From NCBI GenBank assembly GCA_009103225.1, contig RHPI01001616.1, forward strand, positions 250,640-314,639: DNA of 64,000 nt. The letters run 5' to 3'. Of this stretch, positions 21,562 through 27,258 are shown piece by piece. The translations under genes and the position numbers were made by a program. Numbering within the stretch: position 1 is the first letter of the stretch; every line of letters begins with the position of its first letter. The notes under the pieces were generated by a model. That model did not search any database, was not told where the DNA came from, and was given only the letters and a program-made list of their open reading frames with translations. This stretch comes from Chlorokybus atmophyticus. Lineage: Eukaryota > Plantae > Mesostigma and Chlorokybus algae.

Positions 21562-24500
21562 TCACCGTCCTTCTCTTGGCGGAGGATTGCGTAATTGTGC
21601 GTTTGACAGCATCTGATGCATGCTTCCCAAACCATTGTCGCTTGCATTGATGTTGTTGTTGTGTATGTCTGCGGCGGTGTTGTTGTGTATGTCCGTGATG
21701 ATGTCCATGACGCGGGCAGGGTGAGGCGGCGAGTGCAAATGTGGTTGCCATGACCACAACAAGCTGCTATTCACAGCATCAACGGCAGCAGCCGTAGAGA
21801 GGGAGCCTTGCGTTGGGACCACGCCGTCCGTCTCAGAGTGCTGATTGTGATTGTGATTGTGGTTGTTGGTGTCAGTGCAGTAGCGTTTCGTGTCGTGGGC
21901 ATCAGCATTCGTGTTATCCTCGTGGGCGTTGTTGCCAGTGTTTATGTTGTGGGTGTTGTTGTTGCCGCGGTCGTACTCAGCGGAGGTGCGCTTGAAGTAG
22001 CTCTCCAACAATATCCCACTCCCGCCTCCACCTGCACCACCTCCATTCCCACCTCCACCTCCACGTGCACCACCTTGGTTCTCTCCCAACATGGCGGCCC
22101 ACTGCTCGCGCCACTCTGTGTCCACGCTGTCCCACGTGTGCACGTGGGTGTGGGCATGCTCACTATTGTCCATGAAGCCATCTTGGTTGTAGTTGTTGCT
22201 GTTGTGGTGATGGTTGTTGTGGTGGTGGTTGTCATCCACCTGCACGTTGTTCTCGCCTGCACCAGAGCATAGCCTGCTGTTGTCCGACCCGGATCCAAAT
22301 CCAGAACCAGAACCAGATCCGGAGCCAGATGCATGTGAGCTTCCTCCTCCGTCCATGTCCGCTGCTTCCAGCTTCACTTTGGCTTCTTGCTTCACTACTC
22401 TGGCACTGGATTCTGCTCCCCTTTCAGTGTCGCTACCGCTCGTGCTGCCATTGTCTTTAACAAAAGCCAGCCGCGTGTGCGTGTGCTTGGCACCCGTCAT
22501 GCTGTTGGTGTTGTTGTTGGTGTTGATGTTGGGCTTGATGTCCTCACACATGTTGAGGTTTGTCCACCCTGCGACGTGTGTCGATGAAGGCAAACCCCTC
22601 GGGCTCTGCAACGATAGGTGTGATACACGCTGAGCTGTTGTTGTGGCTACTGCTAAGGCGTGAGCGTTGTTGTTGGTGATGGCATAACTGCTGTTGCCAT
22701 TCCTGAAGGCCACTCTGGCAGGCTGCCCATGCTGTTGTTGTTGGGCTGCCAGTGTGGACACGCCAATAAGCGACCCGTCCATGACCCCACGCTCACGAGC
22801 CACGCGGGCAAGGTCGCCTCTCAGCGCAGAGGCCGAGCGCCAGGACGGGAGGTTAGTGCTCATGTTGTTGTCCATGTTGTTGCTGTGGCCAGAACTGGAG
22901 CTCCCGCTGCCATTCTCACCGTACCACATGAGCATAGGCCGCAGCTCAGATGCCGGCACAACCTGCATGAGATGATGTTAGGACCAAAACAACAACTTAT
23001 ACTGTGTGCGCATGCATGCGGGGGCATTGGTGTGCATGTACGTGTGTGGGAGGGCATCAGTTGGTGCGTGCACACGGGGAACACACACACACACAACATG
23101 TACCTGTACAGGTGGTTGTCCCGATGCCGGTCCCGCATCCAGTGACACTTGCACCATGTTGTGTCCCAGCAGCCCAACAATAGTACATCCCCACCACGCT
23201 GCGTTCCCACCACGCACCTCACCCCCCCCGCCAACCACCTCCACGCGGTCCCCGAGGGCCCACCCGAGGTGCGCCTGACCCGCATGAAAGGCGGGTCCAC
23301 AGGGTGCGCACTCGGCATTGAAAGGGGCAGGAGGCGAAGGCCTCACTAGTGGCAAAGGTGAAGGTGAGCCCTCATCGCTGCGAAGCGTCAGGTCCCGGGA
23401 CCTGTACAAAGGGACCCAAGACGCAGACCTAGGCGGGTTGGGGAATGTGTTTGGGTCCAACACGGGGCCTTGCCTCACGCTTCCTCCTTCACGAGTTCTG
23501 TCACAATACTGAACCTGCGCTTCAATCTGCGGCTCCGTCCGCGCATCCACATACTGCACACATAGGAATACAACTCAACATCAGAACCCAAAGTGGGAAC
23601 CAACATCAGGTCCCAAACACAACATGCAACCAGATCCTGGGATTGGGTCGGTCCTTACCTTTGCATTGAACCAAGCGCCTCGGAACTTCTCTGTTAGGGA
23701 CTGCACTTCCACATTGTCTCCTTTGCGAAATGGTGGTGGGAATCGCGGTGCAAAGGACGAATTGTTGTTGTTGTTGTTGTGGGCGACATTGCTGAGGGAC
23801 GGGGAGAGAGGCGGCCGGGACGCGTAGGAGATTTGGTGGTGATGGTGGTGGTGGTGGTGATGGTGGTGGAAGGAGGAGGATGGAAGGGCCAACATGGTGG
23901 GAGTGTCACCGGCAGCGTCACTGCTGGCGTCGCTGCAGCTGTCATTGTCAAACTCCATGTCGTCTGTGCAAAACACACAAGCGTCAGTGGCTGCATGTGT
24001 AGGTGTGCGTTGGATACCAACCCACATGCATGCTCACAACGATGCGCCCCAACACATGACATACGGGCATGCATGTATGCACGCAACCAACTTGTAAATG
24101 CAGCAGGGTACGCGCACACATGTACACATGCACACATGCATGTGCACTTGCACAACATCCAAGGAAGCAACTCATACCTCCAGCTGCATCGGTATCAGCC
24201 ATCCACCGATTGACGTAGTTGTTGTCATCCTTATTATCCCCGTCCTGGTCATTGCTCATATTGGTGTGCAGCTGCGCCATCATGCGTGGGTTGTGTGCCC
24301 CGGGATGATGAGAATGTTGATGCCCAATCGGAAGGTGATGATGATGATGATGCGACGACGAGGCCACGGGCTCAGATGAAGGGATCATACCAAGACGAAT
24401 CCACATCTCGCGCACGGCGGGAGTTTGAGGCTCGGGCAACGGGGGCCCACAACCTGTGTATGTGTGTTTGTGTGGGTATGTTGTGTCGGTTTTCACTCAC

Positions 24501-27258
24501 TCACTGGCAGAACTGAAGTGATGGGACTGAAGAGTGAAAAGGGTGAATGTGTGCTTATATGTACATGTGTGTATGGGTGTAATGTTGAGGTGCTACCCAC
24601 CTGGTGGGAAGTTGGTGTTGGCATTGGGGCCACGGACAGCACGCACAGCAGCATCATACACGGCCGCGGCCTCCTCGGCTGAACCGTATGTGCCAAGCCA
24701 CACGCGCCTCGCAGCCATCTGACCGCGTATCTCCGCAGACCACTGCACGCAAGAACACAACACCAGACAACATCAGTCACACTGCTCATGTGTTCGATGA
24801 CATACACACACCAAACAGTGTGGATGACCAACCACTTACCCTTCCATAGCGTCGTTGTCTGATGCCTCTGTATCGTCCATTGCGGCCAGGTCCAATGCCC
24901 GTTTGGCTGCCATCGAGACTGTTGTTGTTGCTAATGTTGCTGTGGGTGTTGGGAGTGTTGTACGCGTTGTTGTTGTTGTTGCTGAACCCATAGCTGAAGT
25001 GCATGTTGCTGCTGGGAGAAGGAGGGGGAGGAGCAGTGTTGCTGTTCAGCACGCTATGCATCATCAACGCTGCGTTGGTGTTGCCGTTGCCGCTCAGCAT
25101 GGACATGCTCCTTAAGTACTGCACGTGTGTGGCACAAAACCTGCACACCGACAAGCAGACATTAAGTACTCTATCGACAATGCCAATAACAACAATCACT
25201 ACAACATCAGTCACCACCAACAACAACAACACACAAGCGCGCACATGAACACCCACACTCACAGACATGAGTGCATCCACATGCACATGATGACATGCAA
25301 CTGCTGACACCACACAACAGCAAAAGTAACAACAGCCAGAGAACAACAACTCCCACTGACCGGGTGTCTTCTGCTTGCATTGACACCGCTGCTCTGCACC
25401 TCACTCTTCCATTTCCTTCATCCGAGACGAAGTCACACTGCCTATACGGCGCATTCACATCTTCCAGTATGTGTTTGAGGCAGTACGCATGGGGTTCGAG
25501 ACACAACTTCCTGCATCTTGTTGCTGCGGATGAGCAAAGGAGCCTCCCTTCCATGTTGTAATGCGTCCTTGGCATGCGGGTGCGGTTGTGTTGGTGGGGC
25601 TGGTGGGAGTTGCTGACTGTGGTGGTGGTGGGGGAGGTGTTGTTGCTGCTGGGACTGGTGGTGTTGGCGCTGGTGTTGGTGTTGGGAAGGTTATTGTTGT
25701 TGTTGTTGGGGATGCTCAGCTGCTGGTACTGCCTTTGGTGCCTGGCTGAGGTGCTTCGGCTGGTCCTTCTCGGCCGTGTGGGGTTGCTGCTGTTGTTGTT
25801 GTTGTTGCTGTTGTTGGTGTTATTGTTGTTGTTGTCCGTGCCACTATTCTCCTCATTGGTCTGGTTCTCCTGTGGCACCTGCCCTTGTTGTTGTTGTCCT
25901 TGTTGTTGTTGCTGCTGCTGTTGCATCTGAGCAGCATTCTTGTCTCGCTCCCTATACTTGCGGTTGTACAGCCAACTTTGCACATTCATCTCCGTGATGG
26001 TAGCAGCAATGGGTGGGTTGTTGCTGTTGTTGTTGTTGCTGTTGTTGCTACCGCTGCCACTGCCACTGCTACTGTTGTTGTTTGCACCAGCCTTGTTGCT
26101 GTTGCTTGCTGAGGCTGATAAGCACAATGCAGTCAGCCTGGGCATCACCTCTCTCACAACATCTTTAACACGCAGCTCGCCAGTCTCAGCCACGTACGCC
26201 CTTGTGAAACCCTCCTCAAGAACCTACACAATGAACATGAGCATAACAACCAGGATGACTGTGTGAGTTTGGGTGTGTGTGTGGGGGNNNNNNNNNNNNN
26301 NNNNNNNNNNNNNNNNNNNNNNGGGGCATACCTCAAGTTGTTCAGGTGAGGGTGTCCATTTTGGTTTGGATGCTGGGCGAGAGGAAGGAGCTAGCACGGG
26401 GCTGTTGTTGTGGTTGTAAGGGTTGTAGTTGGTGTAGCTGGCGTAGTTGCTGTGGGGGTTGTGTTGGCTGTGGTGGGGATGGTTCGTTGGGATGTGGCTG
26501 CTGGCGTTGCTGGTGTTGGTGTTGAGGTGGGCGGCCTGGGCAGCTGCCTGCAGGACAAGCTGCTCGTACATGGCAGCGGCAGCAGCAGAGGCGTCCTCCG
26601 CTGCTGCTGAGGCGTCGTCCATGGTGGTGTTGGTGTTGGTCGTCGTCGTTGTCCCCGTGGTCGAAGTCACCTGGTCCATCAATGCCCTGAAGGTGGACAA
26701 CCCAGCCGCCGCCGCTGCCGCTGCTGAGGACGACGACGACGACGACCCCCCTATCGCCGCCATGGCCTGCTGGTAAGACATCCCACCCAGCTCAGCCGCA
26801 TAGGCTGCCAGGTCATCATTGTGGCCAAACCCTCCGACCATACCTACGCCGGCACCCATGTCTAACCCTACGCCCAAACCGGCAACCATACGGACGCCTA
26901 TCCTGTCGCCAGCTCCGCCGCCCTCATCCTTGACCTCCACACCCACGACCACCCTACCGTCAACCCGGTCGCCGCCGCCCGAGTCGCACAGCCAACGTGA
27001 AGCAGGCAGCATGCCTTCGTCAGCATCCAGCCTGACCTCGTCCCTGACTACACCCACGACGACGTGGCTAATCCCCCTGCCAACCCCAACACCACCGCCG
27101 CCGCCGCCGCCGCCTGCTCCGCGGCTTCCACGCCGAGCAAATATCTTCGAGCCGCTAGAATGCGAGCAAAAGATTTGGCCCCACCTTTGCTCGATGAGGG
27201 AATAAAAGGGACTTGAAACAGAGGAAAAGGGGGTCAACGGGGTACGAAACGCTATCAT
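21562..27258 (-). CDS. Multi-domain transcription/chromatin factor: WOX-like homeodomain + zf-C3Hc3H + AP2/ERF + 2x Agenet (~1554 aa, 8 exons)
   Basis: Phase-consistent GT-AG exons 27258-26332, 26223-25361, 25140-24840, 24742-24601, 24453-24178, 23963-23659, 23553-23104 and 22962-21562 (sum 4665 nt, no internal stop). Motifs: [12 protein letters not shown]|[24 protein letters not shown]; LC..RC..C....[23 protein letters not shown]|FCATH; [12 protein letters not shown]|[35 protein letters not shown]; [20 protein letters not shown]; [16 protein letters not shown]..|[13 protein letters not shown]. The start codon is uncertain. Confidence 0.85.

What the first reader, a model, noticed from the sequence alone, without database searches (positions are those of the whole stretch)
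21562..27258. Single gene fusing WOX-like homeodomain, zf-C3Hc3H, AP2/ERF and tandem Agenet domains
Seen: eight phase-compatible exons give a stop-free ~1554-aa protein, and splicing is required to complete each domain (QLE|VLEE, TR|FCATH, YGR|WSAEIR, FNAK|YV, PVQ|VVPASELRP), which argues against a chance concatenation. Known: WOX and AP2/ERF are separate plant TF families, zf-C3Hc3H (PF13891) occurs in KANSL2/INO80D chromatin-complex subunits, and Agenet is a Tudor-like histone-mark reader. I know of no characterised protein with this combination. Inference: a TF with two DNA-binding specificities that reads histone marks and may dock a remodelling or acetylation complex.
Basis: partly seen in the sequence, partly recalled or inferred. 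Interest (0 to 1): 0.85.

Follow-up and report, generated by a model that had tools for sequence, protein, structure and literature searches.

The report
Mosaic four-domain algal transcription factor
In the early-branching green alga Chlorokybus, one predicted gene joins a divergent WOX-like homeodomain, a KANSL2/INO80D-type zinc finger, an AP2/ERF DNA-binding domain and two Agenet domains, a combination I found nowhere else, although liverworts, mosses and ferns have an unstudied look-alike (B3, the same zinc finger, then AP2).

Summary
On the minus strand, eight exons (27258..21562) joined by seven canonical GT..AG introns give a stop-free 1554-aa protein. The assembly gap (26288-26322) lies inside intron 1 and does not affect the frame. 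The window is Chlorokybus atmophyticus. The public RNA-aided gene model Chrsp187S08761 (P0001, 1463 aa) uses the same seven junctions. On the spliced protein, zf-C3Hc3H (48 bits), AP2 (34.6) and two Agenet stretches (50.5) pass Pfam's cut-offs. The homeodomain is sub-threshold (20.4 vs 22.9 bits) and is split by a 34-aa low-complexity insert, but both halves match the WOX proteins STENOFOLIA and WUSCHEL co-linearly. HD-zf-AP2 must be one gene, because exons 2 and 3 each carry parts of two domains. The AP2-to-Agenet link rests on one junction without independent support (intron 5). No paper describes the combination. Uncharacterised Marchantia, Physcomitrium and Adiantum proteins carry B3-zf-C3Hc3H-AP2, with Agenet added in Marchantia; common descent is neither supported nor rejected. 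The AGDP1-type methyl-lysine cage appears not to be conserved, so histone-mark reading and complex docking remain conjecture. The scan had noted this same stretch once before (s1-174104).

The parts
21562..27258 (-). Whole coding span of the 8-exon model (1554 aa). The public model P0001 starts at the ATG at 27012 instead.
26332..27258 (-). Exon 1: low-complexity N-terminus of uncertain start, plus the first 12 residues of the homeodomain (26367-26332).
26224..26331 (-). Intron 1 (GT..AG), containing the assembly gap 26288-26322.
25361..26223 (-). Exon 2: rest of the homeodomain (26223-25939, with a 34-aa low-complexity insert at 26118-26017), an N/Q-rich linker, and the first 61 residues of zf-C3Hc3H (25542-25361).
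24840..25140 (-). Exon 3: the last Cys and His of the zinc finger (25140-25113), a linker, and the first 12 residues of AP2 (24875-24840). It physically ties the finger to AP2.
24601..24742 (-). Exon 4: the remainder of the AP2/ERF domain.
24178..24453 (-). Exon 5: no known domain. Its first ~40 residues (24451-24329) are ~90% conserved in paralog P0130 and precede the first in-frame ATG of the exon.
23964..24177 (-). Intron 5 (GT..AG, 214 nt): the only junction without domain or paralog support, and the only possible hidden gene boundary.
23659..23963 (-). Exon 6: acidic and His-rich linker, and the start of Agenet 1 (23730-23659).
23104..23553 (-). Exon 7: the rest of Agenet 1 (to 23323, with a loop insert) and the start of Agenet 2 (23262-23104). 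The public model removes 23424-23398 as a 27-nt intron.
21562..22962 (-). Exon 8: the end of Agenet 2 (22962-22924), a 450-aa N/H/G/S-rich tail with no detectable domain, and the stop codon.

Best explanation
This is one real nuclear gene of Chlorokybus atmophyticus (public model Chrsp187S08761). It encodes a ~1460-1550-aa mosaic chromatin-associated transcription regulator. The parts in order are: a low-complexity N-terminus; a divergent WOX-like homeodomain with a 34-aa insert; a single KANSL2/INO80D-type C3Hc3H zinc finger; one ERF-type AP2 domain; a plant-type tandem Agenet cassette; and a long disordered tail. About 72% of the protein is low-complexity linker. Shown here: the exon structure, intact zinc ligands, a bona fide AP2 domain and two Agenet domains. 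Inferred: the AP2 domain is the main sequence-specific DNA binder. The homeodomain may add a second, weaker DNA contact. The Agenet pair and the zinc finger tether the protein to chromatin or to partner proteins, though probably not through an AGDP1-like H3K9me2 cage. The N/Q/H-rich regions act as activation or multimerisation regions.
For: The gene model is reproduced independently and is identical in all seven junctions to the RNA-aided public model. The genome paper reports transcript support for 9,066 of about 9,300 Chlorokybus models (PMC7027972). Exon 2 carries homeodomain plus finger, and exon 3 carries finger plus AP2, so no gene boundary can lie between these three domains. Exon 5 has no in-frame ATG before its most conserved peptide, which is ~90% identical in paralog P0130, so it must be spliced to an upstream exon. 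Exon 4 lies 147 nt away in a compatible phase. GC3 is 0.58-0.70 in all eight exons against T/G-rich introns. No TGTAA or AATAAA occurs on the coding strand inside the gene. Genes average about 8 kb apart in this genome, whereas intron 5 is 214 nt. Pfam cut-offs are passed for zf-C3Hc3H, AP2 and Agenet. All eight conserved zinc ligands are present. AP2 matches solved ERF, WRI1 and TEM1 domains at E 3e-15 to 3e-11. The Agenet pair matches both halves of the AGDP3, AGDP1 and DUF724 cassettes. Marchantia also puts Agenet, this finger and AP2 in one protein.
Against: The exon 5-6 junction is supported only by splice signals, phase and composition, and exon 6 does contain in-frame ATGs. The same annotation merged the paralog with a neighbouring acetolactate-synthase-type gene (P0130), so mergers do occur. 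That paralogous copy stops inside exon 5 and has no Agenet. The homeodomain is below Pfam's cut-off, and the single-sequence model gave no homeodomain fold match. No function has been tested.
Confidence: 0.7

Rival explanations
1. Two adjacent genes were merged by the predictor and by the first reader. One encodes HD, zf and AP2 (ending in or after exon 5). The other is a tandem-Agenet gene starting at an ATG in exon 6.
For: Intron 5 is the only junction with no domain or paralog support. Retaining it adds 64 codons and then a stop. Exon 6's open frame holds in-frame ATGs. The paralogous copy contains zf-AP2-exon 5 only, and the scan's note on that locus lists HD+zf+AP2 without Agenet. The same annotation demonstrably merged neighbours in P0130.
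Against: Only 214 nt separate exons 5 and 6, in a genome with about 8 kb per gene. The junction has canonical GT..AG and a compatible phase. Exons 5 and 6 share the GC3 bias of the other exons. No poly(A)-type signal was seen inside the gene. Marchantia has Agenet together with the same finger and AP2 in one protein.
Confidence: 0.2
2. The N-terminal 'homeodomain' is not a functional homeodomain. The protein is then a zf-C3Hc3H-AP2-Agenet factor with a helical, low-complexity N-terminal region that only resembles WOX helices 1 and 3. This rival is compatible with the single-gene reading.
For: The Pfam Homeodomain score is 20.4 bits, below the 22.9 cut-off. A 34-aa insert sits between helices 2 and 3. 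Position 49 is Leu rather than Phe. The atlas and both fold searches gave nothing. No WUS-box or EAR motif is present.
Against: The Pfam E-value is 4.6e-4, with two stretches in the right order. Phmmer against PDB finds STENOFOLIA (E 0.0044) with helix 1 and helix 3 co-linear at chain positions 3-33 and 53-79, and also WUSCHEL and CDX2 helix 3. The single-sequence model places three helices at the expected positions. W48, N51 and the K-x-R-E-R motif of WOX helix 3 are present.
Confidence: 0.2
3. The locus is a decaying or transposon-assembled chimera of gene fragments, not a functional gene.
For: According to the scan's unchecked notes it lies between retroelements. A partial duplicate exists about 250 kb away inside a chimeric model. 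Over 70% of the protein is low complexity.
Against: All 1554 codons are open across eight exons with seven intact splice-site pairs. All eight zinc ligands are kept and the AP2 core is intact. GC3 bias is uniform.
Confidence: 0.05

Closest known systems
Land-plant B3-zf-C3Hc3H-AP2 proteins: Marchantia MARPO_0093s0032 'EREBP-like factor' (P0005/P0097, 2171 aa), Physcomitrium A0A7I4A7U5 (P0027), Adiantum nelumboides MCO5603119 (P0055). All are uncharacterised.
   Same: They have a single C3Hc3H finger followed downstream by AP2 in a very long, linker-rich protein, with another DNA-binding domain upstream of the finger. Marchantia also has an Agenet region that aligns co-linearly with both Agenet domains here. 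The finger shares 'APY..QCD' and 'RCR'.
   Different: B3 takes the place of the homeodomain. There are 2-5 AP2-like domains instead of one. Agenet is N-terminal, not C-terminal. The AP2 here is closer to canonical ERFs (65-75 bits) than to theirs (about 38-41 bits). Their fingers form a 100/98 clade that does not include P0001 in the best tree, though joining it is not rejected (AU p 0.30).
WOX homeodomain proteins (WUSCHEL 6ry3, STENOFOLIA 6wig)
   Same: The helix-1 motif K/R-W-x-P-x-x-E-Q and the helix-3 motif N-V..W..N-x-K-x-R-E-R are shared, and these are the best homeodomain matches in PDB.
   Different: The match is below Pfam's cut-off. There is a 34-aa insert between helices 2 and 3. 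No WUS-box or EAR motif is present. WOX proteins are short and carry no AP2, finger or Agenet.
ERF-type AP2/ERF factors (AtERF1 1gcc, ERF096 5wx9). RAV/TEM1 is the known AP2+B3 two-DBD precedent.
   Same: There is a single AP2 domain, about 58% identical to ERF-group proteins. RAV shows that plants do combine AP2 with a second DNA-binding domain.
   Different: ERFs are small single-domain factors. No known ERF or RAV carries a homeodomain, a C3Hc3H finger or Agenet.
KANSL2 / INO80D (zf-C3Hc3H, PF13891)
   Same: The finger has the same eight-ligand pattern. It groups with the first finger of two-finger KANSL2/INO80D-like proteins.
   Different: There is only one finger rather than two, the protein context is unrelated, and nothing here shows association with NSL or INO80 complexes.
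Plant tandem Agenet cassettes (AGDP1/ADCP1, AGDP3, DUF724 proteins)
   Same: Two consecutive Agenet domains end in the typical 'LRP...W' and match both halves of the AGDP3 and AGDP1 cassettes.
   Different: The matches are weak (E about 0.01). Agenet 1 has a long loop insert. Of AGDP1's Tyr122/Trp127/Phe144/Glu149 cage, only the Trp seems to be kept.

Membership tests
Homeodomain, WOX class | Match to the Homeodomain profile (PF00046) at or above the curated cut-off | tested here: not met
   20.4 bits against a cut-off of 22.9, E 4.6e-4, two stretches, on P0001:205-345. No hit at E<=0.01 on the whole protein.
Homeodomain, WOX class | WOX-type helix 1 and helix 3 signatures in the right order and spacing | tested here: inconclusive
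   STENOFOLIA 6wig E 0.0044 with stretches at chain positions 3-33 and 53-79, and WUSCHEL 6ry3 E 0.25. However, a 34-aa insert separates helices 2 and 3, and the fold searches were uninformative.
Homeodomain, WOX class | WUS-box (TLxLFP) or EAR motif, which are features of the modern WOX clade only | tested here: not met
   A regex scan of P0001 found none.
AP2/ERF superfamily, ERF type | AP2 profile (PF00847) at or above the cut-off | tested here: met
   34.6 bits against 33.3. Solved ERF, WRI1 and TEM1 domains match at E 2.9e-15 to 2.6e-11.
AP2/ERF superfamily, ERF type | A single AP2 domain | tested here: met
   One stretch only, at P0001 604-653.
zf-C3Hc3H (KANSL2/INO80D-type finger) | PF13891 at or above the cut-off, with all conserved Cys/His ligands | tested here: met
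   48 bits against 27. All eight conserved ligand columns are filled in alignment A1.
KANSL2 / INO80D proteins proper | Two C3Hc3H fingers per protein, and membership of the NSL or INO80 complex | tested here: not met
   P0001 has one finger, whereas KANSL2/INO80D-like hits have two. Complex membership is not testable here.
Plant tandem Agenet cassette (AGDP1/AGDP3 type) | Two adjacent Agenet domains (PF05641) at or above the cut-off | tested here: met
   50.5 bits in two stretches on P0001:820-1010. Both halves match AGDP3 7yt9 co-linearly.
Plant tandem Agenet cassette (AGDP1/AGDP3 type) | Aromatic cage Tyr/Trp/Phe plus Glu in the second Agenet domain, used for H3K9me2 | tested here: inconclusive
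   The cage residues are taken from PMC6208443. In the HMMER alignments the Y-x-D-G-W-W motif reads G-N-A-A-W-W and the Phe/Tyr position aligns to Leu or Ser. The alignment is of low confidence.
Land-plant B3-zf-C3Hc3H-AP2 proteins | C3Hc3H finger upstream of AP2 in one polypeptide | tested here: met
Land-plant B3-zf-C3Hc3H-AP2 proteins | N-terminal B3 domain | tested here: not met
   No B3 hit in P0001. A homeodomain-like region occupies that position.
Land-plant B3-zf-C3Hc3H-AP2 proteins | Finger belongs to the land-plant finger clade | tested here: inconclusive
   The clade has 100/98 support without P0001. Forcing P0001 into it costs 5.4 lnL, AU p 0.298. The earlier AU tests were mis-specified.

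The most novel reading that the evidence does not exclude
A 'DNA-binding domain - single C3Hc3H finger - AP2' core, with Agenet readers attached, is an ancient streptophyte regulator family dating back to the split of Chlorokybus from the rest of the lineage. Its N-terminal DNA-binding module was later swapped (homeodomain in Chlorokybus, B3 in bryophytes and ferns). It has gone unnoticed because it was not recovered from seed plants. The Chlorokybus protein would then be the only known factor pairing a homeodomain with an AP2 domain.
Probability: 0.3. Interest if true: 0.7.

Novelty: new variant of a known kind. Interest (0 to 1): 0.5.

Why it matters
Plant transcription-factor families are normally treated as separate lineages defined by one DNA-binding domain. 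This gene, in the earliest-diverging streptophyte clade, places a homeodomain-like module and an AP2 domain in one polypeptide with two chromatin-type modules. An unstudied bryophyte and fern architecture (B3-finger-AP2) repeats the finger-AP2 core. If the two are related, this defines an overlooked streptophyte regulator family and a natural case of DNA-binding-module swapping. If they are not, it shows that the same modules were assembled twice. In either case, Chlorokybus and Marchantia offer testable proteins for how two DNA-binding domains and an Agenet pair cooperate. The result is limited because function is wholly inferred and one junction lacks RNA proof.

Tried and rejected
(2) X1 holds 58% of the sampled words and looks like a transcriptome-sized assembly from a multi-organism study, but its kind is only guessed, so I do not count it as expression evidence. 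(3) search for homologous proteins with exon 8 found nothing; low-complexity words probably filled the candidate list. With P0001:600-860 it found only generic ERFs and no Chlorokybus transcript fragments. (4) look-up of encoding contigs has no record of P0001. (5) The spliced exon 5-6 joint is absent from metagenome contigs, which is uninformative. (6) The AlphaFold single-sequence model of the homeodomain region had pLDDT 57.7, and Foldseek and VIA-align returned only generic helical matches. The protein atlas gave no usable hit. (7) I did not submit an insert-free composite of the homeodomain because it has no reference. That step is left out. (8) My first two AU tests rejected a Chlorokybus plus land-plant finger clade, but they were mis-specified, because four B3-finger fragments nested in the land-plant clade had been left out of the constraint. 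The corrected test does not reject it. (9) The zinc finger has no solved-structure relative by sequence; only WDR5 noise appeared. (10) Rfam found nothing on either strand.

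
Full report
WHAT IS THERE. The feature lies on the minus strand. I located the junction peptides and read the splice contexts. There are eight exons: 27258-26332, 26223-25361, 25140-24840, 24742-24601, 24453-24178, 23963-23659, 23553-23104 and 22962-21565, with the stop at 21564-21562. Seven introns of 97-220 nt separate them. All are GT..AG and all are in compatible phase. The joined CDS is 4665 nt and encodes 1554 aa with a single terminal stop. Retaining any intron runs into an in-frame stop, after two codons for intron 4. 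GC3 is 0.58-0.70 in all eight exons, whereas most introns are T/G-rich.

THE GAP. The N run 26288-26322 starts 9 nt after the intron-1 donor (GTATGCCCC|NNN) and ends 63 nt before the acceptor, so it is entirely intronic. The exon 1/2 joint rebuilds helix 1 of the homeodomain in register: the alignment to the STENOFOLIA homeodomain runs ungapped across it. Frame continuity across the gap is therefore not an issue. Only the true length of intron 1 is unknown.

WHOSE GENE. An exhaustive HMMER search with exon 2 returned P0001 (1463 aa), 100% identical over all 287 residues. Its source name is jgi/Chlat1/2782/Chrsp187S08761, from Chlorokybus atmophyticus. P0001 uses exactly my seven junctions. It equals my model from residue 83 onward (ATG at 27012) minus nine residues, which it removes as a 27-nt GT..AG mini-intron at 23424-23398. 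That intron is much shorter than the other seven, so I regard it as doubtful. The genome paper (PMC7027972) describes a PASA/AUGUSTUS/GeneMark annotation aided by RNA. It reports 74 Mb assembled and about 9,300 models, and it states that 9,066 Chlorokybus coding sequences are supported by transcripts. Its main text does not mention AP2 or WOX, and its held supplements do not list this gene.

DOMAINS. On single exons Pfam sees only pieces, as expected if introns split the domains. On the spliced protein, three families pass their curated cut-offs:
- zf-C3Hc3H scores 48 bits (cut-off 27).
- AP2 scores 34.6 bits (cut-off 33.3).
- Agenet scores 43-50 bits in two stretches (cut-off 27).

All eight conserved Cys/His columns of the finger are filled, and the last Cys and His are encoded by exon 3. 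The AP2 domain matches solved WRI1, ERF096, AtERF1 and TEM1 domains at E 3e-15 to 3e-11. It is about 58% identical to ERF-group proteins. The Agenet pair matches both halves of the plant tandem cassettes of AGDP3, AGDP1 and a DUF724 protein, but weakly, at E about 0.01.

The homeodomain is the weak member. Pfam gives 20.4 bits against a cut-off of 22.9 (E 4.6e-4, two stretches). A search of solved structures finds STENOFOLIA (E 0.0044), with helix 1 and helix 3 aligned co-linearly to chain positions 3-33 and 53-79. It also finds WUSCHEL (E 0.25) and CDX2 helix 3. A 34-residue Ser/Asn/Gly insert lies between helices 2 and 3. A single-sequence AlphaFold model (pLDDT 57.7) puts three helices where expected, but it is too poor for fold searches, which gave only generic helical matches. 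No WUS-box or EAR motif is present. I call this region 'probably a divergent WOX-like homeodomain'. About 72% of the protein lies outside the four domain types and is N/S/A/G/H/Q-rich.

ONE GENE OR SEVERAL. The links differ in strength:
- Exon 2 encodes most of the homeodomain and most of the finger.
- Exon 3 (100 codons) encodes the end of the finger and the start of AP2.
- Exon 4 finishes AP2.

No gene boundary can therefore lie between these three domains.

Exon 5 has no domain. Its open frame has no ATG upstream of its first ~15 residues, and its first ~40 residues are about 90% identical in the paralog P0130, far better conserved than the finger-AP2 linker. Exon 5 is thus an internal coding exon that must be spliced to an upstream exon. 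Exon 4 lies 147 nt away in a compatible phase.

The Agenet domains are split across exons 6/7 and 7/8, so those three exons belong together.

That leaves intron 5 (24177-23964, 214 nt) as the only conceivable gene boundary. Several points argue against a boundary there:
- The splice sites are canonical and the phase is compatible.
- Exons 5 and 6 show the same GC3 bias as the other exons.
- No TGTAA or AATAAA signal occurs on the coding strand inside the gene. This is weak evidence, because I do not know the Chlorokybus signal.
- Genes in this genome average about 8 kb apart.
- Marchantia has Agenet, this finger and AP2 in one protein.

Other points argue for a boundary:
- Exon 6 has in-frame ATGs.
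- The paralogous copy ends within exon 5.
- The same annotation fused that paralog to an acetolactate-synthase-type enzyme (P0130: three TPP-enzyme domains at 130-670, then from residue 694 a 70%-identical copy of P0001 residues 496-704).

I put the single-gene reading at about 0.7 for all four domain types, and near certainty for HD-finger-AP2.

RELATIVES. Among 96 finger hits in 1.84 billion representatives, most are short or are two-finger KANSL2/INO80D-like proteins. Three named long proteins also carry AP2 downstream of a single finger:
- Marchantia MARPO_0093s0032, 'EREBP-like factor' (2171 aa): Agenet, B3, finger, and several AP2 domains.
- Physcomitrium A0A7I4A7U5 (1755 aa): finger and AP2.
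- Adiantum nelumboides MCO5603119 (1339 aa): B3, finger and two AP2 domains.

In a careful tree of 49 fingers, these and four unnamed fragments (two of which show B3 as well as the finger) form a clade with 100/98 support. P0001 falls in an unresolved polytomy among 'first fingers'. Forcing P0001 into that clade is not rejected (AU p 0.30). My earlier AU tests were mis-specified and should be ignored. P0001's AP2 domain is closer to ordinary ERFs than to the AP2 domains of these proteins. Common descent of the finger-AP2 core is therefore open. No protein with a homeodomain next to this finger or next to AP2 was found anywhere. No paper holds the relevant term pairs or gene identifiers.

HOW IT PROBABLY WORKS. 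All of this is inferred. The protein is most likely a nuclear regulator whose ERF-type AP2 domain provides sequence-specific DNA binding. The divergent homeodomain may add a second contact. The finger and the Agenet pair may provide chromatin or partner contacts, and the long N/Q/H-rich regions may act in activation or multimerisation.

AGDP1 binds H3K9me2 through Tyr122, Trp127, Phe144 and Glu149 of its second Agenet domain (PMC6208443). In the alignments the Y-x-D-G-W-W motif reads G-N-A-A-W-W here, and the Phe/Tyr position aligns to Leu or Ser. An AGDP1-like cage is therefore probably absent, although the alignment is of low confidence. 'Docks a remodelling or acetylation complex' rests only on the finger's occurrence in KANSL2 and INO80D, and is conjecture.

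SURROUNDINGS. The flanks hold no convincing ORFs. The scan's unchecked notes place retroelements at about 16.3 kb and from 29 kb.

VERDICT. This is a new variant of a known kind, a mosaic plant transcription regulator. It is already present as an undescribed public gene model, and an overlooked partial counterpart exists in bryophytes and ferns. The scan had noted this same stretch once before in another window (s1-174104), and had noted its partial paralog (s1-078994).

Noticed in passing
outside the window, same scaffold (public model Chrsp187S02968 = P0130), about 250 kb beyond the window end: A partial paralog of this gene (end of the finger, AP2 and the first ~40 residues of exon 5; 70% identical) is joined in the public model to a complete acetolactate-synthase-type TPP enzyme. 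It is followed by a short second TPP-like piece. This looks like an annotation merger across a segmental duplication.
   Followed up: partly
window 23398-23424 (-): The public gene model removes 27 nt (nine in-frame codons, GT..AG) as an intron inside the loop of Agenet 1. All other introns here are 97-220 nt, so this mini-intron is probably a prediction artefact or a transcript variant.
   Followed up: partly
P0005/P0097/P0098 (Marchantia), P0027 (Physcomitrium), P0055/P0102 (Adiantum), plus fragments P0056, P0009, P0043, P0052: An apparently undescribed land-plant protein family with the order (Agenet)-B3-single C3Hc3H finger-AP2 x 2-5, 1300-2250 aa long. Its fingers form a clade with 100/98 support. 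Only bryophyte and fern members were named among the hits.
   Followed up: partly
window 26700-27258 (-) and 26819-27205 (+): The first ~80-200 codons are Gly/Val/Ala-rich with no homolog, and the start codon is ambiguous (27258, 27012 or later Met codons). A 128-aa Pro-rich ORF on the opposite strand mirrors the same GC-rich repeats and is probably not a gene.
   Followed up: no
window introns 2, 3, 5, 6 (25360-25141, 24839-24743, 24177-23964, 23658-23554): On the coding strand these introns are strongly T/G-rich with (TG)n-like runs, whereas the exons are A/C-rich (AAC and CAG codon runs giving poly-Asn, poly-Gln and poly-His). This is a sharp compositional exon/intron contrast that could help gene finding in this genome.
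   Followed up: no
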